64,000 nucleotides of DNA, from positions 62,001-126,000 of the IMG/VR virus record IMGVR_UViG_3300032242_003291; one strand, 5' to 3'. The position numbers were made by a program, and so were the translations under genes. The notes below the pieces were generated by a model. That model saw only the letters and a program-made list of their open reading frames with translations, did not search any database and was not told the DNA's origin. Positions 1,158 through 29,564 of this stretch are shown piece by piece (position 1 is the first letter of the stretch; each line of letters starts with the position of its first letter).

Positions 1158-1535
1158 TTAACAACAAGCAGTTTCAGAAATAAAACTATCTTGGATATTG
1201 ATATAAAGCTCCTCTCTAATTGGTAATATTAAATTACCCTCATCGTTTTTAATTAAAAACTGACCTTGGTATCTACCCACGGTGTCTGTATCGTATTTTG
1301 TAAACTTAAAATAAATGTAATATTCAGGTGACGCTCCTTCAGGTAAAATTAAATTAACAATTTCACATGGGGCAGAAACAATCTTAGGAATACCCGTTTC
1401 TACATCAACCATAGAAAAATAAATTGATGATACTTCTAATGATTGCATCAGTTCAAGATACCCAGCTCTACCATCTTTTACTACCTGCATTTTCAACACA
1501 GGGAGTGTTGCATTTTTTTTGATAAAAAATTCCAT
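1158..1535 (-). CDS. Hypothetical protein, possibly BppU-N-like virion/baseplate adaptor
   Basis: Start reassigned to MEFFIKKNATLPVLKMQV (ATG 1535), 4 nt after a TATTTAT motif. Beta-rich, ends DTDTVGRYQGQF-type motif. Confidence 0.5.
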   Translation of the reverse strand: MEFFIKKNATLPVLKMQVVKDGRAGYLELMQSLEVSSIYFSMVDVETGIPKIVSAPCEIVNLILPEGASPEYYIYFKFTKYDTDTVGRYQGQFLIKNDEGNLILPIREELYINIQDSFISETACC

Positions 1536-1551
1536 AACAATAAATATATTG

Positions 1552-3228
1552 TTATGACTCTTTACGTAAGTCTCCGCTATAATGTTCAAATCTATTATGT
1601 TCAGTAGGTGTCATCAACAAGATACCAGGATATAACTCCTTTTTTTTGACTAACTGATACATATGACTCATCCAAGTTTGTTCGAAAGGATGTGCCCAAG
1701 TAGTATCCAAAAACATTTTTTTATTTCCTGTTTTACTTACAACTTGAGGCCAATTACAATAGTAAACCTCACCAACAGCATATGGTAATCCCTTATGTAT
1801 TATAATATTTTCGAACAAAGTTTTGGGAGCATTTGGGTCCAACCCTTGAACTGGTAATCTGTTTTTACCAGGCCAAAACTGTTCTCTAACATGTTGGGGA
1901 ACGTTATACCAAGCCCATTGAGTTCCATTGTCTCCATAAAATTCTGAGTAGTTCAACTTTAAAAAATCAAAATTTTCCTTTTTCATTATTTCTAATGACT
2001 TTGTATAAAGATTTGGAATAAATCTATTAAAACCGTTTCTACAAACTTCCCCTTCATGAGGAAAGAAAAACATATCATCTTCAAAAAACAAATAGTAATC
2101 CAAGTCAGTTGTATCAAAGTGCTCAGCAATAAATTGTCTTCCACCACAAATACCTAAATTATCTTTTTTAATATGTGTAAAATTATGTTCTTCACAAAGT
2201 GCTGAGTATTCTTCAAAAGTTGATACATCCGATGAATTATCCAACAAAAATTTTTCTGTCTTAATTAAATAATCCTTATCGTATTCAATCATAGATTTAA
2301 TTAAAGTCCTAAACTGATTCGGACTATTAAATGTTATAACATATAATCCAACTTTTGATGTATCTAAGGTATTAACGCTTTCAATAACTTTAGCTTCATT
2401 CTTTATTTTAAGAGTTTCGTTCTTCAAGTCTTCAAAGAATTTACCTACCAAACCATTTGATTCAATTTCAAAATAATTTATTAAATCTGAATGCTTGTAA
2501 CACATTATACTGAATATTGATTCTTCAGTACCCATGTAACCCTCATCTAAAGTTGTTTTTAACAATGAATAATATATCCCATTAATATCTCCAATCGAGT
2601 CTTTTGGTCCACCAAAAAACCCTCCTCTTGCAACTTTATTTACTTTATCTCCTGCAATAGAATTTAACTTATTATATTCAAACCCATGTATTTCATTTTC
2701 TGCATCATATGGAAAACAAATGAATGAAAATTTAGAAATATATTTTGATAACTTGTCTAAGACTTTATCGTGTGTAAAGTAACCTGGATGTACAGTATTT
2801 GTTAATCCACCATCAATCCAAAAAAGATATTCAGAATTGAATTGGTCCATTATTTTAGCATCATTTAACATGAATACTTTTGACATTACAAGAGGATTAT
2901 AGTTTTCCAATCTTGCTTGAGTTGAATCTTTTAACCATCCTGCTCGATTTGCCCAATCTTCGTTTGTTCTGATTTTTTGAATCATATCAAAAAACTCACT
3001 ATTCCTAAACCAATCTAAAGGTCTAACAATAAATTGAGTATTATCTTTTGACCTTCTCTCAAAAACAAAATCTCTTAGGCTTTCTTCACCAAATATAATC
3101 ATATTGGCGTCTACACCTAACAATGAACTAAATTTATCTAAATAATGTTGATAAGGTCTTGACCAACCTTCTTTAAGTTCATCTCTACCGATATCCCAAA
3201 TACCAGTTACTAAAGTTATATTACTCAT
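1552..3228 (-). CDS. HtrL/YibB-like domain fused to a C-terminal GT-A (GT2-like) glycosyltransferase domain
   Basis: N-half ITLVTGIWDIGR, LFWIDGG, GGFFGG. C-half has DxD-like YYLFFEDDMF and FEQTW. Confidence 0.6.
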   Translation of the reverse strand: MSNITLVTGIWDIGRDELKEGWSRPYQHYLDKFSSLLGVDANMIIFGEESLRDFVFERRSKDNTQFIVRPLDWFRNSEFFDMIQKIRTNEDWANRAGWLKDSTQARLENYNPLVMSKVFMLNDAKIMDQFNSEYLFWIDGGLTNTVHPGYFTHDKVLDKLSKYISKFSFICFPYDAENEIHGFEYNKLNSIAGDKVNKVARGGFFGGPKDSIGDINGIYYSLLKTTLDEGYMGTEESIFSIMCYKHSDLINYFEIESNGLVGKFFEDLKNETLKIKNEAKVIESVNTLDTSKVGLYVITFNSPNQFRTLIKSMIEYDKDYLIKTEKFLLDNSSDVSTFEEYSALCEEHNFTHIKKDNLGICGGRQFIAEHFDTTDLDYYLFFEDDMFFFPHEGEVCRNGFNRFIPNLYTKSLEIMKKENFDFLKLNYSEFYGDNGTQWAWYNVPQHVREQFWPGKNRLPVQGLDPNAPKTLFENIIIHKGLPYAVGEVYYCNWPQVVSKTGNKKMFLDTTWAHPFEQTWMSHMYQLVKKKELYPGILLMTPTEHNRFEHYSGDLRKES

Positions 3229-4105
3229 AAATTCTATTAAATTCTTCTAATATTCTATAAAAACTTTTATTGTTTTGGAACAACTCTTCTGATGTTCCTT
3301 GTGGTGCATTATCTCTACACCACCATATATCAAAATGTTTTCTTACAAATAGTTCTTTATGGTTGAAATACATTAAGGTCATTATTTGTTCTTCATGTGG
3401 TAACCCCTCGTCATTACCCAAAATACTTTGAACATAATTTTCAAACGTAGTTACCATTTCATCCCACTTATCTCTATGTCCACCAAACAATCCACCAATG
3501 ATATGAATACTTCTATCATACTCTTTATACCACTTTGAATTCACAGTTCCTGACCAATAATTTCTATCATTTTCTTTACCAAGGATAAGAAATTTATCTT
3601 GAGTATCCTCGATTAAGTTTTTCAAAAAGTCATTATTAAAGATTGTACTCTCATAAAATCTTCTCATTGGATGTTTATCATAGGTGAGGTATTTCAATGG
3701 AATTAAACCACAATGAGATAACCCTGCATCAATCCAATAATAAAAATCATAAGACTTATCTTCATTCCACCACCAACTCCATTTAGAATATTGAATTTCA
3801 ATACACCTATCACCTTTCTTTATTTCTTCGACATTTTTTCTCAAATTAATTAAATCCTTAAACTTACAATTTGATATGTCAAAAACTTCAAACTTTAATT
3901 GTGATTCAGGTATTTTGTTTTCACCATAAAAAAATTCTTTTAATGAACTAATTTCTCTATCTGAAGTATAACAAAGAAAATCTGCGTCAGTCATCTTTAA
4001 TAAAGATAAAAGACTATATCTGTAGTGACTACCTCTTGCAGGTCTTCCACCTAATTCGGTTCCATTCAAATCGCTATATATAGCTGTTATAAATCTAGTT
4101 GACAT
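3221..4105 (-). CDS. HtrL/YibB-like putative glycosyltransferase
   Basis: FITAIY, YYWIDAGLSH, IGGLFGG and EEQIMT parallel the N-half of the neighbouring gene. Start reassigned to MSTRF (4105). Confidence 0.55.
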   Translation of the reverse strand: MSTRFITAIYSDLNGTELGGRPARGSHYRYSLLSLLKMTDADFLCYTSDREISSLKEFFYGENKIPESQLKFEVFDISNCKFKDLINLRKNVEEIKKGDRCIEIQYSKWSWWWNEDKSYDFYYWIDAGLSHCGLIPLKYLTYDKHPMRRFYESTIFNNDFLKNLIEDTQDKFLILGKENDRNYWSGTVNSKWYKEYDRSIHIIGGLFGGHRDKWDEMVTTFENYVQSILGNDEGLPHEEQIMTLMYFNHKELFVRKHFDIWWCRDNAPQGTSEELFQNNKSFYRILEEFNRIYE

Positions 4106-4838
4106 TGTATTGTAAATGTTGTTTCTGAAGTTTAATGTTTTTATTCCCCTCTTCACTTAAATATTGACCAGGTATTTTAACTGGAGAATATTGGTTCCAA
4201 TTATATGTTTGAGTATAAAAATTGTTGTATTGACCATGAGATACATCAGAATATGAATTCTTTTGTGGAGCTATTGGTAATATTGGACAATAACTTTGAA
4301 TTACAGGATAAACATGTTTGACTAGTTGTTCATCAATAGGAAGAACATAATCACCGCTCTGAAATGCATATTCTTTAATACTTTCCACAAGTTCAAAAGA
4401 AGAAACATCATAAATTAGAATATTAGTTGCAAATGTTTCTGTTAATCTTTCGTTAGGTTTTGGTGGTAGATTAGTTAAATCTAACAACATGTTATATTTG
4501 TCACTAATATTCATTGGTCTATTTAATGTTGGTGCCAAATTCATAACACCAAAATCAATGTATTGAATTTGTTTTTCCAAATCATCAATAAATGATTTTG
4601 CATAAGGCATCACATCACAATCATCTTCAATAACCATCACACGTTTATACCCTCTTTCCTTAGCAATATTTATAATTCCTAAATGAGAAAGAGTACATCC
4701 CATGTAACTGTTTCTGTTAACAGCTTTGAATACTTCGTAGTCCCAACCGATATAATCTAATTCAAATTTAATATTATCTAATCTATCAGGTCTTGTTTCT
4801 AAATTAACTACAAACTTTGGTATTTCGTTGAATTTCAT
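4095..4838 (-). CDS. GT25 family glycosyltransferase (LgtB/Lic2A-like beta-galactosyltransferase family)
   Basis: FVVNLETRPDRL, GCTLSH, VMVIEDD, PIDE motifs. Confidence 0.75.
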   Translation of the reverse strand: MKFNEIPKFVVNLETRPDRLDNIKFELDYIGWDYEVFKAVNRNSYMGCTLSHLGIINIAKERGYKRVMVIEDDCDVMPYAKSFIDDLEKQIQYIDFGVMNLAPTLNRPMNISDKYNMLLDLTNLPPKPNERLTETFATNILIYDVSSFELVESIKEYAFQSGDYVLPIDEQLVKHVYPVIQSYCPILPIAPQKNSYSDVSHGQYNNFYTQTYNWNQYSPVKIPGQYLSEEGNKNIKLQKQHLQYNVN

Positions 4839-6103
4839 TAACTAACAACATTATGATTTAGTTGACCTGTTAATCTATCACACCATCCTTTCGATTCTGA
4901 GTGTGGCCAAACAACCCAATAAGTTGGCATTACAGTAGTTTGGAATTCTCTCCACACTTTACAGTAACCATCAGGGTCTCTCATGAAACCAGCAATCTCA
5001 TTTTTATCAGCATCTTTTCTGAATAATGTTTCATCATTAGGTCCGTGGAATGCAACAACCCAAAAGTCATAATCTTTTTCAGGTACACTAGTATAACCAA
5101 CATCGATACAATGTTTGTATATTGTTGCAAAACTTGCTTTCCATTCTTCTTCATCCTCAATAAACGGACTTGGAGGATATTTTTTATCTAAACAATGTTG
5201 GTCAATTGCTCTTTTTTCAAATAATAAACCAGCATATCTTTCATAATCTCTTAATGTTCTAACAGTACCAAAACCATAAGGACCATCATGACCTTCTTGA
5301 GTTTCACCATCCATACCAAATAATTTTCTATTAGTTAAATGTGAAATTCTATTTTTCTCTCCCCAAGTCTTATCATCATCCCATTGTTTTGTTCTACCTT
5401 TACGAGTGTATTCGTGATAAACTACAGGGATATGTGGGTGGAACAAATCATAACCCCACGTGTAAGCTCTTGCGGCAATTGATATTTCTTCTCCGTGGAA
5501 ATAATATTCAGGATTATGTTGAACCTCAGTCGAAAATTCTCCCGTAGTAAAACAGAAGTGAGCTGAGTAAAATCTTGCAGGTACAGGTTTTGTCATTTCC
5601 CTCCAACCTGGAATTGTTTCAGGTAAAAAGAATACTGCACCTTCAGGAATGAATCTATCAAAAGCCATTCTCCAAGCATCATTTGCTCTTCCCGCAGGGT
5701 CATTCTCGGGGTCAAAAGATGGGACATAACCCGTAAGTAGAGGTTTCTTATACCCATCTTTTTGGAGCCCCTTTACCATCTTAATTAAGATATCATCCCA
5801 ATCTTGTACAAACCTCATGTGAGAATCAATTTGCATTGTATAAGTCTCACCATCATATAATTGTTGCGTTAGGTTTCTTGCCCAACAAACTCCTTTAGCT
5901 TCCTCATAAGGAATATCTAATATTTTGAATCTTTTGTCTGTTCTGAATTCATCTAAGTTGTCGAAACCATCAGTTTCACTGAATTGTCTTGCTATGGAAA
6001 AAACCAAATTCTTGGGTTTCTTGGCGTGTGCAATCATATCCTTTAAGGTAGGGATTAATTGTGGGTCCCTGTATGATGCAATTTGAATAAAAATTTTGCT
6101 CAT
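4838..6103 (-). CDS. GT60 family polypeptide alpha-GlcNAc transferase (Gnt1/OGNT-like)
   Basis: IFIQIASYRD, AKGVCWAR, MQIDSHMRFVQDWD, FHGEEISIAARAYTWGYDLFHP, YHEY match remembered GT60 motifs in order. Confidence 0.82.
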   Translation of the reverse strand: MSKIFIQIASYRDPQLIPTLKDMIAHAKKPKNLVFSIARQFSETDGFDNLDEFRTDKRFKILDIPYEEAKGVCWARNLTQQLYDGETYTMQIDSHMRFVQDWDDILIKMVKGLQKDGYKKPLLTGYVPSFDPENDPAGRANDAWRMAFDRFIPEGAVFFLPETIPGWREMTKPVPARFYSAHFCFTTGEFSTEVQHNPEYYFHGEEISIAARAYTWGYDLFHPHIPVVYHEYTRKGRTKQWDDDKTWGEKNRISHLTNRKLFGMDGETQEGHDGPYGFGTVRTLRDYERYAGLLFEKRAIDQHCLDKKYPPSPFIEDEEEWKASFATIYKHCIDVGYTSVPEKDYDFWVVAFHGPNDETLFRKDADKNEIAGFMRDPDGYCKVWREFQTTVMPTYWVVWPHSESKGWCDRLTGQLNHNVVS

Positions 6104-6126
6104 TTATTATGTTTTGTCTTAAAAAT

Positions 6127-6156
6127 AAAAAACCCCCTACAAAAGTAGAGGGTTTT
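6127..6156. terminator. Intrinsic terminator-like hairpin between the PT-repeat genes and the GT60 gene
   Basis: AAAACCC-CCTAC-AAAA-GTAG-AGGGTTTT with flanking A/T tracts. Confidence 0.65.
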
Positions 6157-6177
6157 ATTTATATAATTTTTTTTATT

Positions 6178-7272
6178 TTACGTATGTGATGGTGTTGGTG
6201 TTGGAGTGTGACTTGTTGTTACGGTTGGTGTTGGGGTGTGAGATGCGGTTGGTGTTGGTGTTGGGGTGTGCGATGCAGTTGGTGTTGGTGTTACACTACA
6301 AAGTGTGCTGTATCCAAGAGTTGCCCCTGTTGCACATCCAATACCGCAATCATTATTTACATAGTAAACTATACCATCAAGAGCGTACCATCCATCAGGA
6401 TTTCCTGTGTTTACACCACCTGGGTCAGAGAAGAATAATGTTGATGCACTAAATTGAGGATGGTTAGTCCAAATCGTTGCATTAGTACTACAACTACAAG
6501 CTTCATCAGCACTTGACTCACTATGACATAAAGAAGTGTGAACGTATCTTGCTGGTTCTGTTGTTGATGGTGTAACTGTCGGTGTTGGAGTTGCAGTTGC
6601 TGTTTGTGTTATTGTTGGTGTAGGTGTTACTAAGTTAGCACATCCTGAAGTGTATTTTCCTGTAACTTCACCGAATCCACCTGATACAACATATAATATT
6701 GTTCCATCAGAGTAGTATCCGTCAGTAGCTCGGAATGTAGTTGTTGAATTAGTATATAATATTTCTGATACTTCAATTGTTGGTCCACCTGACCTTGTAC
6801 CATAATAAGCTGTTTCAGTTGCTCCACAAGCATCGTTTGGTGTTACACCATATCCCAATTGGAATTGATAATTGATTGCTGTTGGTGTAGGTGTTGGTGT
6901 TACCGCTGCCGTTCCTGTTTGAGTTGGTGTAGGTGTTGGTGTTGCTGCTGCCGTTTCTGTTGGAGTTGGTGTTGCCGCTGCCGTTCCTGTTTGAGTTGGT
7001 GTTATACTTGGTGTAGGAGTATTAGTTGGTGTTGTTGTTGGAGTTGGTGTAGGTGTTGCAGTCGCATAAAGTGGAGGGAAAGTTCCTGTATTAACCAATG
7101 CAATTGAGTGGTTAAATGCTGTTGAATAAGTCCCGTTAATCAACCAAATGCTTTTAGTTTCTCCTGGTAATAGTTCAACTTGGTATTCCCACATTGAATC
7201 ATCGCATCTTCTATAATTAAAATTAGTTATAGTAGAGCCTGTATTTGTTACGATATATTTGCTACACGCCAT
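6178..7272 (-). CDS. Mucin-like Thr/Pro-repeat protein with Cys-bracketed beta domains (putative virion surface protein)
   Basis: 364 aa; three globular segments separated by (TP)n linkers; TATTTAT motif 16 nt upstream. Confidence 0.75.
   Translation of the reverse strand: MACSKYIVTNTGSTITNFNYRRCDDSMWEYQVELLPGETKSIWLINGTYSTAFNHSIALVNTGTFPPLYATATPTPTPTTTPTNTPTPSITPTQTGTAAATPTPTETAAATPTPTPTQTGTAAVTPTPTPTAINYQFQLGYGVTPNDACGATETAYYGTRSGGPTIEVSEILYTNSTTTFRATDGYYSDGTILYVVSGGFGEVTGKYTSGCANLVTPTPTITQTATATPTPTVTPSTTEPARYVHTSLCHSESSADEACSCSTNATIWTNHPQFSASTLFFSDPGGVNTGNPDGWYALDGIVYYVNNDCGIGCATGATLGYSTLCSVTPTPTASHTPTPTPTASHTPTPTVTTSHTPTPTPSHT
6628..6876 (-). repeat. 83-codon domain duplicated at 7802..8050
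   Basis: INYQFQLGYGVTPNDAC...YGTRSGGPTIEV...VVSGGFGEVTGKY..GC.NLV occurs in both genes, with many synonymous differences. Confidence 0.9.
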
Positions 7273-7339
7273 TTTTTTATGTTTTCTAATAAATACTACG
7301 AATTACTCTAATTTATTTTTTAGAATATAAAAAATGTTA

Positions 7340-8458
7340 TTAAATACATGAAAAAGGTGAACCAACCACAAAACCATTACTGTTCAATTCAAGAACTGTA
7401 TTAGTGACAGAATAGAATCCTGTCATGTTAATTGTAACAGGTCCTGTACTATTATTATAAAATTGTGTATTGATACCGAAGTTTGGTGAATCACCATAAA
7501 TTAAAACAGCACTGAATTGTGAACAAGCATCTGCAAAATTAGTTCCTGAGTAAGATAAGAATGCATATCTTCTATGTGTTGGCGTTGGCGTTGGTGTGTT
7601 AGATGATGTAATACTTGGTGTTGGCGTATTAGTAGAAGTAACACTTGGTGTTACCGTCACTGTTGGAGTATTAGTTGGTGTTTCAGTATTAGTTGGTGTT
7701 AATGTATTAGTAGGAGTTGGCGTTGGTGTTGATGTTTCTGTTACAGACGGAGTTGGTGTTGGTGTATTTGTTGTTGTTTGTGTTACTGTTGGCGTTGGTG
7801 TTACTAAATTAAGGCAACCATTATTATATTTCCCTGTAACTTCACCAAATCCACCTGATACAACGTATAGTATTGTTCCTTCTGAATAGTATCCATCAGG
7901 TGCTGGAGTAGTTACACTTGCATTTGTGTATAAAATTTCAGTAACCTCAATAGTTGGTCCACCTGACCTTGTACCATAGAAATCAGTATTGAATGTTGAA
8001 CAAGCCTCATTTGGTGTAAATCCATACCCTAACTCAAATTGATAATTTATTGAAGTTGGCGTTTGGGTTAAAGTTGGAGTAGGTGTTGGTGTTTCAGAAC
8101 TTGTAATTGTTGGTGTTGGAGTTTCCGTATTTGTTGGAGTATTAGTTGGAGTCTCTGTAGTTGTTGGAGTTTGAGTTGGTGTTTCAGTATTTGTTGGTGT
8201 TAAATATAAAGTTTCTGTGGGAGTTACTGTTGGTGTTGGAGTTGGTGTCGGAGATGGACAAGGAATACTGATTACATATGTATAAGCATATGTTGATACG
8301 TAACAATCATAATTTCCATACCAATAATCAGTAACATACGTAAATGGGAAAGTTTGTGTTCCTAAATCAATTGTTCCACCAGAACAAGGAAAAAAGGTAA
8401 CATTTGCAGTTTGACCGCTTAAATTATCACTAAAAATTGAAACTCCACAATATGACAT
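7340..8458 (-). CDS. Mucin-like Thr/Pro-repeat protein, paralogue of 6178..7272
   Basis: 372 aa; two long TPT linkers; shares the 83-aa domain; TATTTAT 5 nt upstream. Confidence 0.75.
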   Translation of the reverse strand: MSYCGVSIFSDNLSGQTANVTFFPCSGGTIDLGTQTFPFTYVTDYWYGNYDCYVSTYAYTYVISIPCPSPTPTPTPTVTPTETLYLTPTNTETPTQTPTTTETPTNTPTNTETPTPTITSSETPTPTPTLTQTPTSINYQFELGYGFTPNEACSTFNTDFYGTRSGGPTIEVTEILYTNASVTTPAPDGYYSEGTILYVVSGGFGEVTGKYNNGCLNLVTPTPTVTQTTTNTPTPTPSVTETSTPTPTPTNTLTPTNTETPTNTPTVTVTPSVTSTNTPTPSITSSNTPTPTPTHRRYAFLSYSGTNFADACSQFSAVLIYGDSPNFGINTQFYNNSTGPVTINMTGFYSVTNTVLELNSNGFVVGSPFSCI

Positions 8459-8488
8459 AATATATAAATACTTAAAAAAAATGTTTTA

Positions 8489-9043
8489 TTAAAAACAAAT
8501 ACCGTTATTGATTACAAGTCCATCAGCAAAATCAACTTGAATCCATGTCGCTCCATCAGATATAATATTTCCTTGTAGTGTTGGAGGTATTGTACAAGCC
8601 GCATTTCCGTAAACGTAATCACCCGCAACCAATGATTCGAATGGTATTGCACTGTAAATTGCAACATTTGAAGGACCATTCCCAGCCTCATAACACGCAT
8701 CTTCAAAATAACCTGCAGACCATAAATTATAAACAGGAATATGTGTTTGAGTAATACTTGGTGTAACTGTCGGTGTTGGAGTTGGTGTTTGAGTTATGTT
8801 TGTTGGAGTTGGCGTTGGTGTAAATGATGGTGTTGGAGTAACCGAAGGACATACTCCAATGTAATTTACATTTAGGGGAGCACCATATTCTTCAACATAC
8901 AAATTCAAGGCACATATTTGATGAGACTCTAAAGGATTGATTGGTGTTACACTAATAATACCTGTACATCCTGTCCAAGCATAAAATCCTTGTTGAACGG
9001 TATTGTAGTTGATTATTTCGTAAAAATTACAAATGTCTGACAT
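8489..9043 (-). CDS. Short Thr/Pro-repeat protein with two Cys-containing domains
   Basis: 184 aa; CPSVTPTPSFTPTPTPT linker; C-terminal EDAC...GLVINNGICF domain. Confidence 0.7.
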   Translation of the reverse strand: MSDICNFYEIINYNTVQQGFYAWTGCTGIISVTPINPLESHQICALNLYVEEYGAPLNVNYIGVCPSVTPTPSFTPTPTPTNITQTPTPTPTVTPSITQTHIPVYNLWSAGYFEDACYEAGNGPSNVAIYSAIPFESLVAGDYVYGNAACTIPPTLQGNIISDGATWIQVDFADGLVINNGICF

Positions 9044-9044
9044 G

Positions 9045-11747
9045 TTATATAAATTGTCCGTGATAATTTGATAAGTTGTATTCCAAACTTGTTATATTTT
9101 CCCCATCAATACAGTTACCCATTAATTCTAAAGTTACTACTGTACCGTTCGAAACTGCCCCATGTGCCGCAGTAAATCCTACATTAATAAATGTATATTC
9201 ATCAGGTACTGCAACCATAGTACCTCCTTTATATAATACGGCCTGAATGTAAACAGGATTAGAACCTACGGTTCCGTACCACGCAGCATTAGTTGTTATT
9301 GTGATTACATTTTGACTCGGATAGTCGTTTTTGAATTGAATTAAGTCGATTAAAACTGATTCAAACCCTACACCTGTATTATCTCCACCCCAAGTGAGGA
9401 TTGGAGCACCTGAAGGGTATTCAAAAGAACAACACCATCCTATATAATCAGAAAGATTATTTTGTCCAATATCAGGAACCGTAACTCTTGTCCTTGTATC
9501 TAAATCTGTTCCGTCATTGAATGCATATGTCACAACAATATAATCCGCATCAAACACAAAACCACCAGGTACAAAAGGTATTGGTGTTGGCGTTGGAGTT
9601 GGAGTAGATTCTGGTGTTTCACTTAATGTCACCGAAGGTGTTTGTGTTGGTGTTGGCGTAGGATTTTGAGTAGACCCAATAGACGGAGTTGGAGTTGGTG
9701 TTTCGGTATTTGTCGGTGTTAAAGTTGGTGTTGGCGTAGGATTTTGAGTAGACCCAATTGTTGGTGTTGGGGTTGGTGTTGGAGGACAATTATATAAATC
9801 ATATCCCAAGTCATTACAAGGTAACGACAGATAAATTAAATCATTACAAGGTAACGTTAGGTAATATATGTCATTACTAGGCGTCGTAACCCTACAGTTA
9901 GGACAATCAGGGTCTAAAAGATTATATCTATTTTTTAATATTCTGAAGTTATGTTTAACTTGGGATGCGTTTAATGGTTCGGTGTACATTCTGAATGCAC
10001 TAATATCACCAATTAAACTACCACCAAATATTTCTTCAAGTTTTATATGAGTTGTTAGACCAGAATAAATTGTGTGGTCTAAGTCATGTGTAGTTAAAGA
10101 TTCGGGGTCTTGTTGGTAAACAATATCATTAACGGTATCAGGACATCCTCCTGAAAAAGTTAAGTTGTCGTGAAGGCCTTGAGTACCACCCCCAACTGAA
10201 ATGTTATATCCAACACCAATTTGTTTTTCTTTTGGTGTATTCAATAATCTTGGAATGATTTCTTCAAAATTTTCAGCAACCATAAACAACTTACCGTTAA
10301 CATAAAACTTCAATGTTCCGAGTCTATATTTTTGTTCCTCAGTCCACATATCAGTAAATGTTACAATTTCAGTAGTTGCAGGGTTATAATCTTTTTCGTG
10401 TGTGATTGGAGGTTCAATTAAACTTACACTATTGTTGGCTGGCGTTGCAGTAAAAATTGTATCAACAATTAATCCAAGTCCACCTTTCATATTCAAATCA
10501 CAAGGGTCGAACCATTCATTTCTTTGAAATACTGCGTCAATCTGAACCCAATGTTCCACATTCACATATGGTGTTTTAATACAATTATCAAATATACCTC
10601 TTGTAGAACACCACTCACTCACAGTAGTTCCTGTTTCATACGTCAATCCTGTAAGACAAGTTCCACTTGTTTCACATCCTCCAGTCATTCTATATGTCTT
10701 AACACATAACCTTGGATTACCAGTTTCCCCACTCAATCTTAGAGATAGACCATTTGACATACCGTCAAATGTTGGGTCAGTTTCAGGATATTTCACTGTT
10801 GTAGAACAATTACAAGGACAACCACAACTACAATTTGTTGATGTTCCTCCTGATTGTTGATATACATCAATACAGCTATGCTCTGCGGTTTTTCCTGTTT
10901 GTTCACATTCACAAGTGTGCATACAAGTTAAACCTGAAGTTACCCTTGTATATCCCGTATCTTGTGACGGACTACCGTCAGGGTAGTGATAAAATTTATT
11001 TTCAGCACGAGCTCCTAAATAAAAAAACGTACCTTTATTTTCAGGATATCTTTTATTTAATCCGAAATCAGTATTACCTGTCCACCTATATCTTAACATG
11101 AATTCCGCAGTCCAACCAAGAGAAGGTCTCTGTGGATATATTTGATAATCATAACCAGGTAGTTTGTAAAACCCTTGATAAAATCCTCCTTCTAATCTTG
11201 AAAAATACCCAACTGAATCACTGTCGGTGTGGTATTCCAAAGTATAGTCATAAGACCCGTCATTCCATAATCTATTGTCTGAAGTTGTAAATCCTGTAAT
11301 AGGGTGCAACTTCATTCTTCTGTCGTATTTGTATCTACTATATGTGTCAGCAGATGATGTATATAGTCCTGTAGTTATTTCAATTGTTTCACCTGACATT
11401 TTTTTAACCAAACCATTGTCAATACCTGTTAAACCTACATCACATAATTCAGTTGTAATTGGACAAAAGTTTGGGTCAACATCAACAGGATTCCAATAAT
11501 TTTCAGAGACAATAATGTCGTTATCGAAACTACAAGAATTATCTTGACAAATCGTTGTTGCAGAGTTATTCAAGTCAAATTTGAATGGCATTCTATTACC
11601 ATCATTCTCTCCAATTAGAAGTGGCGAAAATACAACCTCTTGGTCATAATCTTTTTCATCAGATGCAAGACAAATGTCTGTTATTTCATTAACAGGTTTA
11701 AGACCCCACCTTCTGTAATTATATTGATTAATGTTTTGATATGCCAT
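9045..11747 (-). CDS. Large Cys-rich protein with LamG/ConA-like lectin-fold segment and Thr/Pro linker (putative virion protein)
   Basis: 900 aa; [46 protein letters not shown] are LamG-like motifs; PTPT linker near the C-terminus. Confidence 0.6.
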
Positions 11748-14510: not shown

Positions 14511-15722
14511 ATGTCAAAAATCAATGTACTAGTAGTTCCTTCCGACAGAACAGGTGTTGGTAAATTTAGGTCTGTAGACCCTCACATCTTCCTTCAATCA
14601 TTATATCCTGATGATTTTCATGTGGATATTATTTATGATTTCTCATATGACGATTTAGAGTTTTTCAAAAAATATCAAATAGTTTCTTTCCACAGAAGTA
14701 TTGGTCCTGATTTTGAAAGAGCACACGATTTAATTATAAAATTAAATAATCTTGGTATTGCCACTGTCGGAGATATCGATGATTATTGGATGCCAGGTAA
14801 AGAACACCCAATTCACGACATCATCAGATTTAACAAAATCAATGAGAAAATTATCGCAAACCTAAAGGTTACGAAATACGTTACAACAACTACGTCATTA
14901 TTTGCTGATGAAATAATGAAAATGAATAAAAATGTTGTTGTATTTCCTAACGCAATTAATCCAAAAGAATCTCAATTTAGAGAGCCGACTCCTGAATCTG
15001 ATAGATTAAGAATTGGATGGTTAGGTGGTTCGTCTCATCTTCACGACTTAGAATTGTTAGACCAATCTTTTAGTAAATTAACATCATATAGTGATAAACT
15101 ACAATATGTTTTATGTGGATTCGATACAAGAGGAACTGTTACTGAAATTAATCAACAAACAGGAGAACATACAAAAAGAAACATTACACCTCAAGAAACT
15201 GTTTGGGCTCAATATGAAAGTATTTTTACTCAGAAATATTCAACGATATCTGAAGACTACAAAAAATATTTACAAAAATATATTCAAGAACCATATCCAA
15301 ATGAGAATAATGAGGCATATTCAAGAGTATGGACAAAACCAGTTCAATCTTATGCTAAGAATTATTCTAAATTTGATGTATCTTTAGCACCAATCAAAAA
15401 TCATATGTTTAATAGAATGAAGTCTCAATTAAAAGTAATTGAAGCAGGTTTCTATAAAAAAGCACTAATCGCATCAAATGTTGGTCCATATACCATAGAT
15501 TTAAAACATTGTTTACAAAATGGTAATTTTGTTGATGGTAATGCGTTATTAGTCGATGAAAATAGAAATCATAGTGATTGGGCTAAATTCATCGAAAAGT
15601 TAATCAAAAACCCAAATATGGTTACTGATATGGGTGAAAGATTATATGAAACAGTCAAAGACACATATGACTTAAATGTTGTAACGAAAGCAAGAGCAGA
15701 ATTTTATAAATCAATTGTATGA
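14511..15722 (+). CDS. GT4-like (GT-B fold) glycosyltransferase
   Basis: DIDDYW, RIGWLGGSSH, FDVSLAP, KSQLKVIEAG, ALIASNVGPY. Confidence 0.8.
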   Translation: MSKINVLVVPSDRTGVGKFRSVDPHIFLQSLYPDDFHVDIIYDFSYDDLEFFKKYQIVSFHRSIGPDFERAHDLIIKLNNLGIATVGDIDDYWMPGKEHPIHDIIRFNKINEKIIANLKVTKYVTTTTSLFADEIMKMNKNVVVFPNAINPKESQFREPTPESDRLRIGWLGGSSHLHDLELLDQSFSKLTSYSDKLQYVLCGFDTRGTVTEINQQTGEHTKRNITPQETVWAQYESIFTQKYSTISEDYKKYLQKYIQEPYPNENNEAYSRVWTKPVQSYAKNYSKFDVSLAPIKNHMFNRMKSQLKVIEAGFYKKALIASNVGPYTIDLKHCLQNGNFVDGNALLVDENRNHSDWAKFIEKLIKNPNMVTDMGERLYETVKDTYDLNVVTKARAEFYKSIV

Positions 15723-17046: not shown

Positions 17047-17058
17047 AAAATTAAAATA

Positions 17059-18687
17059 ATGTTAACAGTAGCATACTCAACAAGAGAATCGAAACCTGAA
17101 TTTATAGAATACTTGAAAAAAAGTTCAGGACAAAAAAAAATAGAAGTAATTGAAAAAGTGAACAAGGGAGATAAGTCTCTTGCACAGGTATATAATGAAG
17201 TTTTGTCTGAAGCGACGACTGACATAATTGTTTTTTGTCATGACGACATTTATTTTGATACAAATGGTTGGTACCATAAATTAATCAAACATTTTGAAAA
17301 ATCTGATTACGGTATTATTGGAATGGCGGGAACTACTTCTATGCCTGCAAGTGGTAAATGGTGGGAAGATAGAAAAAAAATGATAGGTATTGTTAACCAT
17401 GAACACGAAGGAAAAAAGTGGGAGTCAAAGTATTCAGAATCATTAAATAACTCAATTGAACAAACAGTCATTGTCGATGGTCTCTTTATTGCTGTAGACA
17501 GAAAAAAACTTAAAAAGAACTTCAATGAGGACTTCAAAGGGTTTCACTTCTACGATATACCATTTTGTTTTGAAAACCATTTAGAAGGTGTTAAAATAGG
17601 TGTAATTACAAATATTAGACTGACACATAAATCTATTGGACAAACTAATGAGCAATGGGAAATTAATAGGCAATTATTTGAAGAAAAATATAAAGATAGT
17701 CTTCCATTTAAATTACCAATTAATCCAAACAAAAGACTCAAGATTTTAATCTCTTGTTTATTCTTTAGAACATTTACAGGCTCTGAATTATATGTTTATG
17801 AATTAGCCAAAAATTTAATTAATATGAATTGTGATGTTACCATCGTATCTCAAATAGGTGGACCATTAACAGACATGGCAAAAAGATTAGGTATAAAATG
17901 TTTAAGCTTTGAACAATCACCAGGGTTCAAACTTGGAGATGGTGTGTGGGGATTTAATACACCTGAAGGATTCAAGGCTTCGACTGAAAATGTAATGTAT
18001 AGAGTTTCTGAAGTTAATTTCGATTTAATTCATATTCAACATAAACCTGTTGCAGAAAGAATGATTCAATTTTATCCTGAAATAGATAAAATCTACTCAA
18101 TACATTCTGAAGTGATTGAATTAGAAGACCCAATTAAACATGAGTCAATTAAAAAATACATAGCAATAAGACCAGAAATTAAAGATTATATGATTAATGA
18201 ATTTCAAATACCTGAAGAAGATATTGAAATCATATACAATCCTGTTGATAACGAAAAATTCAAACCAAGAAAAGTTAATGAACAAAATGCTCTTTTGTTT
18301 GTTGGTACAATCGATTATTTAAGAAGAGAAACAATTTTAGATTTAATTGATTATACAAAAGAAAATGGTAAAGAATTATGGTTAATGGGTGAAGATAAAC
18401 AAAATTATTTACCTTCATTACTTACACAACCACATATAAAACATTTTAAGTCATCTTGGAATGTTGAAAAACTAATGAATGAGTGTAATGAAACAGCAGG
18501 AATTCAATTAGGTAGAACAACAATTGAAAGTTGGTTATCAGGAAAACCAAGTTGGATTTATAAAGTAGATTCCACAGGATTAATTCAATCGAAAGAAAAA
18601 TTTGACCCTCCAACAGATGTTGAAAAATATTACGCTGAAAATGTTACCAAACAAATCAAAGAACAATATTTCAAAATCCTTTCATGA
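17059..18687 (+). CDS. Bifunctional glycosyltransferase: GT2-like (GT-A) fused to GT4-like (GT-B)
   Basis: VFCHDD, IVDGLFIA, FHFYD in the N-half; FTGSELYVYELA, IYNPVD, GRTTIES in the C-half. Confidence 0.72.
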   Translation: MLTVAYSTRESKPEFIEYLKKSSGQKKIEVIEKVNKGDKSLAQVYNEVLSEATTDIIVFCHDDIYFDTNGWYHKLIKHFEKSDYGIIGMAGTTSMPASGKWWEDRKKMIGIVNHEHEGKKWESKYSESLNNSIEQTVIVDGLFIAVDRKKLKKNFNEDFKGFHFYDIPFCFENHLEGVKIGVITNIRLTHKSIGQTNEQWEINRQLFEEKYKDSLPFKLPINPNKRLKILISCLFFRTFTGSELYVYELAKNLINMNCDVTIVSQIGGPLTDMAKRLGIKCLSFEQSPGFKLGDGVWGFNTPEGFKASTENVMYRVSEVNFDLIHIQHKPVAERMIQFYPEIDKIYSIHSEVIELEDPIKHESIKKYIAIRPEIKDYMINEFQIPEEDIEIIYNPVDNEKFKPRKVNEQNALLFVGTIDYLRRETILDLIDYTKENGKELWLMGEDKQNYLPSLLTQPHIKHFKSSWNVEKLMNECNETAGIQLGRTTIESWLSGKPSWIYKVDSTGLIQSKEKFDPPTDVEKYYAENVTKQIKEQYFKILS

Positions 18688-19394
18688 TTATTTTAACAAC
18701 AACATATAATTGTGCTCAATACGTGGAAAGATGTTTGTTGAGTATAATGTCTCAAAGATTCAAAGACTTTACTTGTTATATTACTGATGATTTATCAACA
18801 GACAATACAAGAGAAGTAGTCAAAAAGACTATTGAAGGTGACCCAAGATTTATTTTAATCGAAAATCACATAAAACTTTACCAACCTGGAAATTACGACC
18901 AAATTATTAATTGGAGAGGAATTCCTGGTGAAGAAATTTGTGTTGAAGTTGATGGTGATGATTGGTTACCTAATCCAAGTGTGTTCGATATAATTAACGA
19001 TACATATAAAGATGAAAACGTTTGGATGACAAGTGGTTCATTTAAGTATCATGATGGTAGACAAGGATTTGCAAATCCACCAACAAAATTTACAGATGTA
19101 AGAAAACAAACATTCACATTATCTCATTTGAGAACATGGAAATCGTGGTTATGGAAAAAAATTAAAGAAGAAGATTTGAAAGATGAAAATGGAAATTATT
19201 GGGACGTTGCAGGAGATTTATCATTCATGTTCCCGATGTTTGAAATGTCAGGTGAAGAACATTATAGATTCTTACCAAACATAAATTATATTTATAATGA
19301 ATCTAATCCAATCAATGACCACAAGGTTAATATGAGTAATGTAATTCAAACGGTTAATAAGATTAGAAATAAACAACCATATAAAAAAATTTAA
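18684..19394 (+). CDS. GT2 family glycosyltransferase
   Basis: ILTTTYN, ITDDLSTD, VEVDGDDWL, HLRTW. Confidence 0.78.
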   Translation: MIILTTTYNCAQYVERCLLSIMSQRFKDFTCYITDDLSTDNTREVVKKTIEGDPRFILIENHIKLYQPGNYDQIINWRGIPGEEICVEVDGDDWLPNPSVFDIINDTYKDENVWMTSGSFKYHDGRQGFANPPTKFTDVRKQTFTLSHLRTWKSWLWKKIKEEDLKDENGNYWDVAGDLSFMFPMFEMSGEEHYRFLPNINYIYNESNPINDHKVNMSNVIQTVNKIRNKQPYKKI

Positions 19395-20003
19395 ATGCAT
19401 ACAGAACATAATGATAGATGGAATAAAGATAATGGTAACTTCCATCTAGTTGCTAATTACCCATTAACAGAAGATTCTTGGGTTATCGAATTAGGAGGAT
19501 ATAAAGGAGAGTGGACTAATAGAATAGCATCGAACTACAAATCCAACATACTTGTTGTCGAACCAATAAAAGAATTTTGTCAATATATAATTGATTCACA
19601 AGGAACAAATCCAAAAGTAATTATTGAGAATAACGGTATTTCAACTGTAGAAAGAGTCACTCAATTATCTTTTAACGGAGACGCCTCTTCTGAATATCTT
19701 GAACAAACAAATGAAAAAAGAGATGTTACTTGTTATACTTTAGATTATTATATGTCAAAATATAACATTGATAAAGTAGATTTAATGCAAGTCAACATTG
19801 AAGGAGAAGAATATCCTTTATTTGAGCAGTGGATTAATTCTGATATTTTAAAAAAGTTTCAATACATTCAAATACAATTTCATAGAGTTGGTGACAATTA
19901 TGAAGAAAGAAGACAAAATATTCATAGAGGAATGGAAAATTTAGGGTTTGAGTTAAGATGGGATTACGATTATGTTTTTGAGTCTTGGAAAAATAAGAAT
20001 TAG
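19395..20003 (+). CDS. FkbM-family SAM-dependent methyltransferase
   Basis: VIELGGYKG, VVEP, LMQVNIEGEEY, QIQFH. Confidence 0.75.
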   Translation: MHTEHNDRWNKDNGNFHLVANYPLTEDSWVIELGGYKGEWTNRIASNYKSNILVVEPIKEFCQYIIDSQGTNPKVIIENNGISTVERVTQLSFNGDASSEYLEQTNEKRDVTCYTLDYYMSKYNIDKVDLMQVNIEGEEYPLFEQWINSDILKKFQYIQIQFHRVGDNYEERRQNIHRGMENLGFELRWDYDYVFESWKNKN

Positions 20004-20049
20004 GTATAGACATTAATATTGAATATATTAAGTTTATTTTAAAAAAAAT

Positions 20050-21703: not shown

Positions 21704-21704
21704 T

Positions 21705-24408: not shown

Positions 24409-24422
24409 CATTTTTTAATTTA

Positions 24423-25376: not shown

Positions 25377-25396
25377 AATAAACTAAAAATATAAAA

Positions 25397-26488: not shown

Positions 26489-26494
26489 AATAAT

Positions 26495-26875: not shown

Positions 26876-26892
26876 ACCACAAAAAAAATTTA

Positions 26893-28509: not shown

Positions 28510-28510
28510 T

Positions 28511-29563: not shown

Positions 29564-29564
29564 C

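What the first reader, a model, noticed from the sequence alone, without database searches (positions are those of the whole stretch)
1552..11747. Candidate phage-encoded mucin-type O-glycosylation system: GT60 initiating transferase encoded right after four mucin-like Thr/Pro proteins
Seen: four consecutive minus-strand genes carry long (TP)n tracts, followed directly by GT60, GT25 and two HtrL-like genes. Established: characterised GT60 enzymes put alpha-GlcNAc directly on protein (Dictyostelium Skp1 hydroxyproline; trypanosomatid mucin Thr), and GT25 enzymes typically add beta-Gal. Inference: the phage primes its own Thr-rich virion proteins with GlcNAc and extends the chain, building a glycocalyx-like coat. 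No prolyl hydroxylase is visible in this window, which favours Thr as acceptor. I know of no characterised phage system pairing a eukaryote-type mucin initiator with its substrates.
Basis: partly seen in the sequence, partly recalled or inferred. Interest (0 to 1): 0.88.

Follow-up and report, generated by a model that had tools for sequence, protein, structure and literature searches.

The report
Phage mucin-like protein glycosylation cassette
An uncultured giant freshwater phage carries four proteins with long Thr-Pro tracts beside a sugar-adding enzyme of the family that starts mucin-type chains in protists, and the same pairing in unrelated phages and bacteria suggests an undescribed way of coating proteins with sugars.

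Summary
Four consecutive minus-strand genes (6178-11747) carry Thr/Pro tracts. They are followed by GT60 (PF11397, 1e-66), GT25, a divergent HtrL-like gene, and an HtrL+GT2 two-module transferase. The window is a T4-type jumbo phage from a very abundant uncultured lineage (contigs up to about 326 kb).

In 34 of 34 close relatives with enough upstream DNA, 1-4 hypervariable PT genes sit directly upstream of a conserved GT60 block. The GT60 + HtrL-GT2 pair also lies next to PT-tract proteins with unrelated globular parts in four other settings: XacN1-like jumbo phages, another viral lineage, Bacteroidota and Verrucomicrobia chromosomes, and Gemmatimonadaceae. In cellular loci there are 9 such neighbours against 1.6 expected (P about 4e-5).

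All enzymes and PT proteins lack membrane or secretion signals, and no prolyl hydroxylase was found, so cytoplasmic Thr O-glycosylation is the best model. A 16-kb plus-strand block (GDP-mannose dehydratase, GT10/GT11-like genes, more transferases) probably supplies and extends the glycan.

Not shown: sugar identity, transfer to Thr, or virion location of the PT proteins. "Eukaryote-type" is misleading, because the cassette is widespread in bacteria. I rate it a new variant of a known kind, of high interest.

The parts
9045..11747 (-). 900-aa PT protein: conserved N-terminal region of about 650 aa (25 Cys), a 78-residue Thr/Pro tract (651-728), and a variable C-terminal domain (729-900). Candidate fibre/adhesin and glycosylation substrate.
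   Evidence: The N-terminal 650 aa are highly conserved in at least 2703 clusters whose total length varies from 663 to 1496 aa; many relatives carry PF13385 Laminin_G_3 in the variable C-terminal part. The C-terminus matches phrog_24956 (9e-23). No TM segment or signal peptide.
8489..9043 (-). 184-aa PT protein: two small Cys-containing modules joined by a 37-residue Thr/Pro tract (64-100).
   Evidence: Homologs at 41-75% identity in relatives.
7340..8458 (-). 372-aa PT protein: three small modules separated by Thr/Pro tracts, 147 tract residues in all, 44% Thr.
   Evidence: Module 138-225 is 76% identical to 133-223 of the 364-aa protein.
6178..7272 (-). 364-aa PT protein: three small modules and four Thr/Pro tracts (122 residues), one of them at the C-terminal end.
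   Evidence: A PT gene of this type is the one most constantly found next to GT60 in relatives.
6129..6156 (-). Terminator-like hairpin (12-bp stem followed by a T-run) in the 74-bp gap between the PT genes and GT60.
   Evidence: It is a consensus scan only, but it was the only strong minus-strand site in the region.
4838..6103 (-). GT60-family glycosyltransferase (residues 1 to about 296) with a conserved C-terminal extension of about 120 aa. Proposed initiating polypeptide O-glycosyltransferase.
   Evidence: PF11397 at 1e-66 and phrog_24687 at 7e-163. D93-S94-H95 and H222-P223-H224 are invariant in alignment A1. At least 6775 clusters in metagenomes. Soluble.
4095..4838 (-). GT25-family glycosyltransferase; proposed chain-extending enzyme. 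It is the most variable and replaceable member of the cassette.
   Evidence: PF01755 at 3e-10. 31-88% identity in relatives; replaced by 4-6 kb inserts carrying other transferases and methyltransferases in some.
3221..4156 (-). 311-aa divergent HtrL-like protein, a probable GT-A transferase.
   Evidence: No Pfam hit. Pairwise E=2e-4 to the HtrL part of the 558-aa protein. Profile-profile 98% probability, E=1.7e-13. Conserved in XacN1-like phages at 26-31% identity.
1552..3228 (-). 558-aa two-module glycosyltransferase: HtrL_YibB module (1 to about 280) plus a GT2-like module (about 290-558) with an invariant E383-D384-D385. It is the constant partner of GT60.
   Evidence: PF09612 at 1e-18. Homologs also hit PF00535. 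AF2 pLDDT 86. Best Foldseek matches are tandem GT-A bifunctional enzymes at E about 1e-10. Adjacent to GT60 in most cellular and viral loci.
1158..1589 (-). Conserved 143-aa ORF at the end of the cassette; function unknown.
   Evidence: 60-98% identity at the same position in relatives. No family hit.
14511..15722 (+). GT1-like (GT-B) glycosyltransferase.
   Evidence: phrog_7162 at 1e-44. Pfam Glyco_trans_1_4 and Glycos_transf_1 are below their cut-offs.
17059..21703 (+). Five glycan genes: GT2_5+GT4 fusion (17059-18687), GT2 (18684-19394), FkbM methyltransferase (19395-20003), GT11 fucosyltransferase-like (20050-20877), GT10 fucosyltransferase-like (20870-21703).
   Evidence: E from 2e-32 to 2e-12, all above gathering scores.
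21705..26488 (+). Nucleotide-sugar block: SDR epimerase/reductases (21705-22520, 22517-23419), GDP-mannose 4,6-dehydratase (23416-24408), an unknown ORF (24423-25376), and an epimerase/dehydratase (25397-26488). Probable supply of GDP-fucose or another 6-deoxyhexose.
   Evidence: GMD at 1e-119.
28511..30371 (+). Weak GT1-like gene (28511-29563) and a GT2 gene (29565-30371).
   Evidence: The first is below the gathering score; the second scores 26.2 bits against 23.3.
53976..54425 (-). Fifth PT protein, 149 aa, with an N-terminal Thr/Pro/Ser tract of about 90 residues. It lies inside the T4-type head module and is a possible further substrate.
   Evidence: Neighbouring genes are the S77 prohead protease, MCP, portal and TerL.

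Best explanation
The region is the substrate-plus-enzyme core of a soluble, cytoplasmic protein O-glycosylation system in a T4-type jumbo phage. Shown: a GT60-family transferase, a GT25, an HtrL-like protein and an HtrL+GT2 two-module transferase lie next to four proteins whose globular modules are joined by long Thr/Pro tracts, and this pairing recurs in independent lineages. Inferred: during infection the GT60 enzyme adds the first sugar directly to Thr (less likely Ser) in the tracts of the newly made PT proteins. By analogy with characterised family members, that sugar would be alpha-GlcNAc from host UDP-GlcNAc. The two-module enzyme then adds the next two sugars, and GT25, the HtrL-like enzyme and the plus-strand transferases (GT10/GT11-like, GT2, GT4, methyltransferase) extend and decorate the chain, using phage-made GDP-6-deoxyhexose or GDP-fucose. 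The result would be stiff, protease-resistant, mucin-like stalks. These would carry small Cys-containing or lectin-like modules, most likely on fibres or adhesins exposed on the virion after lysis. Tandem-repeat slippage and module shuffling vary the substrates, and gene swapping in the cassette varies the glycan.
For: GT60, GT25 and HtrL assignments. Invariant DSH motif. The 558-aa enzyme is a confident tandem GT-A model whose best matches are bifunctional transferases, including protein-directed LH3 and COLGALT1. Linkage holds in 34 of 34 close relatives, with hypervariable PT genes beside a conserved GT block. Independent recurrences of the pairing: (a) Saprospiraceae, Lewinellaceae, Cytophagales and Verrucomicrobia chromosomes, where the PT proteins have RR-type N-termini and a T9SS sorting domain; (b) Gemmatimonadaceae PqqD-domain proteins with a PT tail; (c) viral lineage L132/L134; (d) the large convergent PT-bearing genes of XacN1-like phages. 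Enrichment is 9 observed against 1.55 expected, P=3.6e-5, and 0 of 6 in loci lacking the two-module partner. No TM segment, signal peptide, flippase, polymerase or lipid-priming transferase. No prolyl hydroxylase found. Characterised GT60 enzymes act on polypeptide Thr or Hyp (PMC9472816; PMC6939170). XacN1, which has a GT60 ortholog at 47% identity, has at least two PAS-positive virion proteins (PMC5852040). Cassette gene swapping resembles that of glycan-structure loci.
Against: There is no biochemical evidence for donor, acceptor or linkage. All characterised GT60 enzymes are eukaryotic and distant. The close relatives are not independent, and many cellular loci are related to each other, so the P value is optimistic. 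Under a strict tract threshold only 9 of 24 cellular loci have a neighbouring PT gene. A terminator-like site separates the PT genes from the enzymes. XacN1 itself has only a 37-residue PT linker in its neighbouring giant protein. PT linkers are common in modular extracellular proteins whether or not they are glycosylated. Virion location of the PT proteins is not shown.
Confidence: 0.58

Rival explanations
1. The transferases build a glycan on a non-protein acceptor, such as a host envelope polysaccharide or LPS for superinfection exclusion, or a free oligosaccharide. On this view the PT tracts are ordinary flexible linkers, and the adjacency is inherited synteny.
For: HtrL/YibB and GT25 were first described in LPS core loci (family descriptions). 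The plus-strand block resembles an O-antigen-like gene set. A terminator-like site separates the PT genes from the enzymes. Some GT60 loci have no nearby PT gene.
Against: No flippase, polymerase, lipid-priming transferase or any membrane protein is present in the 30-kb glycan region. The compact bacterial islands contain only a PT protein, GT60 and HtrL-GT2 (plus a sulfotransferase or carbamoyltransferase) among housekeeping genes. The pairing recurs with unrelated PT proteins in five lineages. Known GT60 enzymes are polypeptide-directed.
Confidence: 0.17
2. The system does glycosylate PT tracts, but the PT proteins are not virion parts. They would instead be released at lysis or act inside or on the infected cell, for example as soluble adhesins, decoys or matrix-binding proteins. 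Alternatively, the phage enzymes mainly modify the host's own PT-tract surface protein.
For: There is no structural-protein homology for any PT protein. The bacterial counterparts are exported cell-surface-type proteins with a T9SS sorting domain. The phage GT60 is about 70% identical to a Saprospiraceae chromosomal gene.
Against: The 900-aa family has a conserved N-terminal region and swappable lectin-like C-termini, as in fibres. In XacN1-like phages the PT-bearing gene follows the baseplate wedge genes. A fifth PT protein lies in the head module. XacN1 virions carry glycoproteins.
Confidence: 0.17
3. The acceptor is hydroxyproline rather than Thr, as in the Skp1 pathway, with a prolyl hydroxylase encoded elsewhere in the roughly 320-kb genome or supplied by the host.
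For: The best-studied cytoplasmic GT60, Gnt1, is Hyp-specific. The tracts are 22-29% Pro. Only 64 kb of the genome is visible.
Against: No 2OG-oxygenase was found in any scanned ORF of the window or in the compact bacterial cassettes. Thr outnumbers Pro in every tract, and some bacterial tails are Ser/Thr/Ala-rich with few Pro.
Confidence: 0.06

Closest known systems
Trypanosoma cruzi mucin O-glycosylation (TcOGNT, CAZy GT60)
   Same: It uses a GT60-family initiating enzyme. The acceptors are Thr-rich, mucin-like tracts. The first sugar is then extended by further transferases (PMC9472816).
   Different: The T. cruzi enzyme is a Golgi membrane protein acting on secreted, GPI-anchored mucins. 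Here the enzyme and its candidate substrates are soluble and cytoplasmic, phage-encoded and gene-linked, and the donor and linkage are untested.
Skp1 hydroxyproline glycosylation in Dictyostelium and Toxoplasma (PhyA, Gnt1, PgtA)
   Same: It uses a cytoplasmic, soluble GT60 enzyme, followed by a two-module di-glycosyltransferase containing a GT2 domain. PgtA is GT74+GT2, and here the partner is HtrL+GT2. Fucose-related genes are also present here.
   Different: There is no prolyl hydroxylase and no Skp1. The Skp1 pathway modifies one site on one protein, whereas here there are hundreds of candidate Thr sites in repeats. Equivalence of HtrL and GT74 could not be tested.
Mycobacteriophage virion glycosylation (Freeman et al. 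2023, as cited in PMC12582341 and PMC10568470)
   Same: Phage-encoded glycosyltransferases modify the phage's own structural proteins in the cytoplasm.
   Different: From my own knowledge, since the paper is not held: those phages use one to a few transferases of other families, acting on C-terminal regions of capsid and tail-tube subunits. They have no GT60, no dedicated mucin-like repeat proteins and no nucleotide-sugar pathway of this size.
Chlorovirus PBCV-1 and mimivirus self-encoded glycosylation
   Same: Large viruses that encode GDP-mannose dehydratase, many transferases and their own glycoprotein machinery independent of ER/Golgi (PMC5408694 and PMC9614988, listed). The top structural match of the 558-aa enzyme is mimivirus R699.
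   Different: They are eukaryotic viruses. PBCV-1 glycans are N-linked to the major capsid protein, and no GT60-plus-PT-repeat pairing has been described.
O-glycosylated Pro/Thr linkers of bacterial cellulases, cellulosomes and actinobacterial secreted proteins
   Same: Thr/Pro-rich linkers between globular modules carry O-glycans that stiffen and protect them (own knowledge). A PT linker in a solved glycoside hydrolase was the only PDB match.
   Different: Those are modified during or after export by membrane-bound Pmt-type or other enzymes, not by a cytoplasmic GT60 encoded next to the substrate.

Membership tests
CAZy GT60 / Pfam PF11397 (GlcNAc transferase) | Sequence match to the family model above the curated threshold | tested here: met
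   226.3 bits against a cut-off of 21, E=1e-66. The best stretch covers residues 54-296 on model positions 94-351 of 352.
CAZy GT60 / Pfam PF11397 (GlcNAc transferase) | GT-A type metal-binding D-x-H motif conserved | tested here: met
   D93-S94-H95 is invariant across phage sequences of 50-84% identity to the window's GT60, and H222/H224 are also invariant (alignment A1). Their role as metal ligands is inferred.
CAZy GT60 / Pfam PF11397 (GlcNAc transferase) | Transfers alpha-GlcNAc from UDP-GlcNAc directly to polypeptide Thr or Hyp | not testable with these tools
   Needs an enzyme assay or glycoproteomics. Characterised members do this.
CAZy GT25 / Pfam PF01755 | Sequence match above the curated threshold | tested here: met
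   40.7 bits against 24, E=3e-10, but in two short stretches (best 46-102 on model positions 68-122 of 199), so coverage is partial.
HtrL_YibB / Pfam PF09612 | Sequence match above the curated threshold (558-aa protein, N-terminal module) | tested here: met
   68.3 bits against 24.1. The NCBIfam equivalog cut-offs (264.9 and 342) are not reached, so it is a family member but not an ortholog of E. coli YibB.
HtrL_YibB / Pfam PF09612 | The 311-aa protein belongs to the same superfamily | tested here: met
   No direct Pfam hit, but profile-profile probability is 98%, E=1.7e-13 over 219 columns. The alignment includes the WIDxG, GGxFGG and EE motifs.
Mucin-type protein O-glycosylation system (functional class) | Thr/Pro-rich tandem-repeat acceptor domains | tested here: met
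   Tracts of 37-147 residues, 32-44% Thr, encoded by tandem repeats.
Mucin-type protein O-glycosylation system (functional class) | Enzyme and substrate in the same compartment | tested here: met
   No TM segment or signal peptide in any transferase or PT protein (hydropathy scan).
Mucin-type protein O-glycosylation system (functional class) | Initiating enzyme and repeat substrates co-occur beyond shared descent | tested here: met
   The pairing recurs in five lineages with unrelated globular parts. 9 observed against 1.55 expected.
Mucin-type protein O-glycosylation system (functional class) | Glycans actually attached to tract Thr residues | not testable with these tools
   Needs mass spectrometry.
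Skp1-type Gnt1/PgtA pathway | Prolyl 4-hydroxylase that creates the acceptor | tested here: not met
   No 2OG-Fe(II) oxygenase among about 50 window ORFs scanned with Pfam or in the bacterial cassettes. Only 64 kb of a roughly 320-kb genome was visible.
Skp1-type Gnt1/PgtA pathway | GT74+GT2 bifunctional second enzyme (PgtA) | tested here: inconclusive
   The partner is a tandem GT-A enzyme with a GT2 module. Its HtrL module has eukaryotic homologs. No PgtA or GT74 sequence was available for a direct comparison.
Phage virion glycosylation (mycobacteriophage type) | Glycosylated proteins are components of the particle | tested here: inconclusive
   The architecture is fibre-like and XacN1 virions are PAS-positive. 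There is no structural homology and the AF2 model failed.

The most novel reading that the evidence does not exclude
The GT60 + HtrL-GT2 pair, together with a neighbouring Thr/Pro-tract protein, is an undescribed and widespread prokaryotic and viral system of cytoplasmic mucin-type O-glycosylation. Bacteria would use it on exported surface proteins (RR-type N-termini, T9SS sorting domain) and on PqqD-fused peptides. Jumbo phages would use it to build glycan-coated stalks on their particles. It would also be the prokaryotic counterpart, and possibly the evolutionary source, of the protist Gnt1/PgtA pathway that modifies Skp1.
Probability: 0.3. Interest if true: 0.9.

Novelty: new variant of a known kind. 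Interest (0 to 1): 0.8.

Why it matters
If the model is right, one of the most abundant uncultured freshwater jumbo-phage lineages spends about 30 kb of genome on making heavily glycosylated, mucin-like proteins. The GT60 has at least 6775 protein clusters and the 900-aa protein at least 2703. Such glycans would affect how these particles stick to hosts and organic matter, how they resist proteases, and how they are recognised. The model would also give the first function for GT60 and HtrL-type enzymes in prokaryotes and viruses. It would define a compact substrate-plus-enzyme cassette usable for glyco-engineering in bacterial cytoplasm. It would offer a testable origin for the cytoplasmic Skp1 glycosylation pathway of protists. 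The hypothesis can be tested directly with three or four cloned genes and synthetic (TP)n peptides.

Tried and rejected
- Megablast of the 10-kb region against GenBank phages found nothing.
- tblastn of the 900-aa N-terminal region against cultured phages found nothing.
- Sequence searches of GT60 and the 900-aa protein against PDB found nothing, and a profile search matched only PT linkers.
- The AlphaFold model of the 900-aa N-terminal region failed (pLDDT 27.6), so no fold search was run on it.
- XacN1 ORF325 was examined as a possible substrate. It has only one 37-residue PT linker and no homology to the window's PT proteins. I kept it only as weak support; its relatives L119 and L131 have much longer tracts.
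- I tried to test whether HtrL equals CAZy GT74 (the PgtA fucosyltransferase module). Literature searches gave nothing direct and the key papers are not held. The exhaustive HMMER search found eukaryotic HtrL-module proteins (Gracilaria, Paulinella), but their other halves do not match the GT2 module at BLAST level. The question is unresolved.
- DNA glycosylation was considered because of a weak phrog_842 hit. I rejected it as the main role, because a set of more than a dozen transferases, with fucosyltransferase-like and methyltransferase genes, does not fit mono- or disaccharide base modification, and because of the PT co-occurrence.
- Lipid-linked polysaccharide export was considered and ranked low for lack of any membrane component.
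- The plus-strand PS-rich ORFs at 52755-53705 are antisense shadows of a low-complexity minus-strand gene and were discarded.
- The Tat-signal reading of the bacterial PT proteins is by eye only; Pfam's TAT_signal model did not hit.

Full report
**1. What is in the sequence**

ORF calling shows nine co-directional, tightly packed minus-strand genes between 1158 and 11747. The first four, in transcription order, are proteins of 900, 184, 372 and 364 aa. In each, small globular modules, most with 2-6 Cys, are joined by Thr/Pro tracts of 37-147 residues. The tracts are 32-44% Thr and 22-29% Pro, with 155 tract Thr in all. They are encoded by imperfect tandem repeats with periods of 6-72 nt.

A window-wide scan finds such tracts only in these four genes and in one 149-aa gene at 53976-54425.

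The next genes are:
- a GT60-family transferase (PF11397, E=1e-66; phrog_24687, 7e-163);
- a GT25 (PF01755, 3e-10);
- a 311-aa protein with no direct family hit;
- a 558-aa protein whose N-terminal half is HtrL_YibB (1e-18).

Homologs of the 558-aa protein also hit GT2 in the C-terminal half. Its AlphaFold model is confident (pLDDT 86). The best PDB matches are all tandem two-domain GT-A enzymes: mimivirus R699, LH3, COLGALT1, LARGE1, K4CP and heparosan synthase 2, at E about 1e-10. It is therefore best read as a bifunctional di-glycosyltransferase.

A strong terminator-like hairpin at 6156-6129 sits exactly between the last PT gene and GT60. The substrates and the enzymes are therefore probably separate transcription units.

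**2. What genome this is**

The window encodes a T4-type major capsid protein, an S77 prohead protease, a portal and a large terminase, plus PhoH.
- No cultured phage is close at the DNA level.
- The nearest capsid relatives are an uncultured huge phage and phages of Microcystis, Flavobacterium and Rhodothermus.
- The GT60 has 346 relatives in IMG/VR, some on contigs up to 326 kb, and at least 6775 clusters in the protein collection.

This is an abundant, uncultured jumbo-phage lineage. Its GT60 is about 70% identical to a gene on a genuine Saprospiraceae chromosome, flanked by NAD kinase, a BamA-like gene, OmpA and NIF3. That suggests a Bacteroidota host and gene exchange with it.

**3. The wider glycan machinery**

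It contains:
- a GT1-like gene, a GT2_5+GT4 fusion and a GT2;
- an FkbM methyltransferase;
- GT11 and GT10 fucosyltransferase-like genes;
- three SDR epimerase/reductases and GDP-mannose 4,6-dehydratase (1e-119);
- two more transferase-like genes.

None of the transferases or PT proteins has a transmembrane segment or signal peptide. There is no flippase, polymerase or lipid-priming transferase. The machinery is soluble and cytoplasmic, which fits direct modification of proteins better than lipid-linked polysaccharide export.

**4. Is GT60 linked to PT genes beyond chance and descent?**

Close relatives: all 34 with at least 8 kb of upstream DNA have 1-4 PT genes directly upstream of GT60.
- The gap is usually 73-98 bp.
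- There are 155-646 tract residues per locus.
- The PT proteins are 71-1786 aa long.
- There are 24 distinct array configurations.

Meanwhile the GT60 / HtrL-like / HtrL-GT2 / 143-aa block is conserved. GT25 is the variable member. In some relatives it is replaced by 4-6 kb inserts carrying a methyltransferase and RXYLT1-like, GT2-, GT10- and GT7-like genes. The cassette thus diversifies the way glycan-structure loci do. These relatives are not independent, so I looked further afield.

A scan of one genome per prokaryotic species found 32 loci. GT60 is nearly always followed by a homolog of the 558-aa enzyme, and a PT-tract ORF often lies next to the pair. The PT neighbours have unrelated globular parts:
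- In Saprospiraceae, Lewinellaceae, Jiulongibacter, Arcticibacterium and a Verrucomicrobia MAG, they start with RR-type, Tat-like N-termini (judged by eye). Some end in a T9SS sorting domain (PF18962).
- In Gemmatimonadaceae, they are PqqD-domain proteins (PF05402, E=6e-6 and 1.5e-7) with a C-terminal PT/ST tail.

With a strict tract threshold, 9 PT ORFs lie within 1.5 kb of the pair, against 1.55 expected from the flanks of the same loci (P=3.6e-5). None of the six loci that lack the two-module partner has one.

Among viruses:
- XacN1-like jumbo phages keep GT60, a carbamoyltransferase, the HtrL-like gene and HtrL-GT2.
- In several of them the large convergent gene just beyond the cassette has PT tracts of up to 311 residues (L119, L131). 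In XacN1 that gene follows the baseplate wedge genes.
- A further viral lineage (L132/L134; GT60 at 37-39%) has a 402-aa protein directly upstream of GT60. It consists of small Cys-containing modules joined by (PT)n linkers.

The PT tract is therefore the common denominator across at least five contexts.

**5. Mechanism**

Characterised GT60 enzymes transfer alpha-GlcNAc directly to polypeptide: to Thr in T. cruzi mucins (PMC9472816) and to Hyp in Skp1 (PMC6939170). The phage enzyme keeps an invariant D-S-H motif. It also has a conserved C-terminal extension of about 120 aa of unknown role, present from phages to bacteria.

No 2OG-oxygenase was found in the window's scanned ORFs or in the compact bacterial islands, and Thr outnumbers Pro in every tract. 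Thr is therefore the likelier acceptor.

The best model is this. GT60 initiates on tract Thr in the cytoplasm. The two-module enzyme adds the next two sugars. GT25, the HtrL-like enzyme and the plus-strand enzymes then extend, fucosylate or methylate the chain.

The shown parts are the gene content, the fold of the second enzyme, the soluble nature of all parts and the co-occurrence. The inferred parts are the donor sugar, the acceptor residue, the order of steps and the biological role.

**6. Are the PT proteins virion parts?**

This is the weakest step. Evidence against, or simply missing:
- They have no homologs in cultured phages and no solved relatives.
- The model of the 900-aa N-terminal region failed.

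Evidence in favour:
- The 900-aa family has a strongly conserved N-terminal 650 aa followed by a PT tract and a swappable C-terminus, which in many relatives is a Laminin-G/ConA-like lectin domain. This is the usual layout of fibres and receptor-binding proteins.
- The fifth PT protein lies in the head module.
- The PT-bearing gene of XacN1-like phages follows the baseplate genes.
- XacN1 virions contain at least two PAS-positive proteins, and its authors suggested the phage's own transferases make them, ORF334 being the GT60 ortholog (PMC5852040).

I put the virion reading at roughly even odds, given that the tracts are glycosylated at all.

**7. Comparison with known systems and novelty**

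The system works like trypanosomatid mucin initiation, with a GT60 acting on Thr-rich repeats. In its cytoplasmic, soluble, two-step logic it is like the Skp1 Gnt1/PgtA pathway, where PgtA is a GT74+GT2 tandem. It fails a defining feature of the Skp1 pathway (no hydroxylase, no Skp1). I could not test whether HtrL equals GT74, although the HtrL module has clear eukaryotic homologs.

Phage-encoded virion glycosylation is known in mycobacteriophages (cited) and in giant eukaryotic viruses. Neither uses GT60 or dedicated mucin-like repeat proteins.

No paper in the searchable library describes a prokaryotic or viral GT60. "Eukaryote-type" should be dropped, because the cassette is common in bacteria.

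I rate the finding a new variant of a known kind. It is of high interest because it is abundant in nature, mechanistically specific and cheap to test.

Noticed in passing
window 14511-30371 (+): A large glycan and nucleotide-sugar block: a GT1-like gene, a GT2_5+GT4 fusion, a GT2, an FkbM methyltransferase, GT11 and GT10 fucosyltransferase-like genes, three SDR epimerase/reductases, GDP-mannose 4,6-dehydratase, DUF6165, PhoH, and two more transferase-like genes. With the minus-strand cassette, this makes about 17 glycan-related genes in 30 kb.
   Followed up: partly
window 53976-54425 (-): A fifth PT protein (149 aa, with an N-terminal Thr/Pro/Ser tract of about 90 residues), inside the T4-type head module. 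It is a possible head-associated substrate.
   Followed up: partly
window 6129-6156 (-): A terminator-like hairpin (12-bp stem, T-run) between the PT genes and GT60, suggesting separate or attenuated transcription of the substrates and the enzymes.
   Followed up: no
window 52688-53956 (-): A 422-aa acidic, Gly/Glu/Met/Pro-rich low-complexity protein (scaffold-like?). Its antisense frames produce spurious Pro/Ser-rich ORFs at 52755-53294 and 53325-53705 (+).
   Followed up: no
window 56445-58457 (+): An FtsH-like ATP-dependent protease (phrog_4871, E=2e-242), unusual cargo for a phage. FtsH-like genes also lie near the GT60 cassette in bacterial loci L110 and L116, which is probably coincidence.
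   Followed up: no
window 40282-42093 (-): The major capsid protein is 603 aa. It aligns to T4-type capsid proteins in two pieces covering only about 55%, implying a large insertion domain.
   Followed up: no
window 1158-1589 (-): A 143-aa ORF conserved at 60-98% identity at the end of the cassette in all relatives, with no family match.
   Followed up: no
L087 6349-9649; L104 7948-15151: The bacterial cassettes add other modifying enzymes. Saprospiraceae has a 691-aa sulfotransferase next to the PT gene. Jiulongibacter has a second GT60-like gene, a carbamoyltransferase (as in XacN1) and an FkbM methyltransferase fused to HtrL-GT2.
   Followed up: partly
L097 8510-9235, L102 9230-9955 and other Gemmatimonadaceae loci: PqqD (RiPP-recognition-type) domain proteins with a hydrophobic segment and a C-terminal PT/ST tail lie directly upstream of GT60. 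This hints at a RiPP-like, leader-guided glycosylation.
   Followed up: partly
P0375 (Gracilaria KAI0558802.1), P0387 (Paulinella): Eukaryotic proteins carry a C-terminal HtrL module 33-34% identical to the phage one (E from 1e-36 to 1e-40). Across 1.84 billion representatives, the module family has 2284 members in several fusion architectures.
   Followed up: partly
L046 10885-16756, L024 3664-7474 and similar loci: In some close relatives GT25 is replaced by 4-6 kb inserts with methyltransferase, RXYLT1-like, GT2-like, GT10 and GT7-like genes. This is strain-level glycan diversification.
   Followed up: partly
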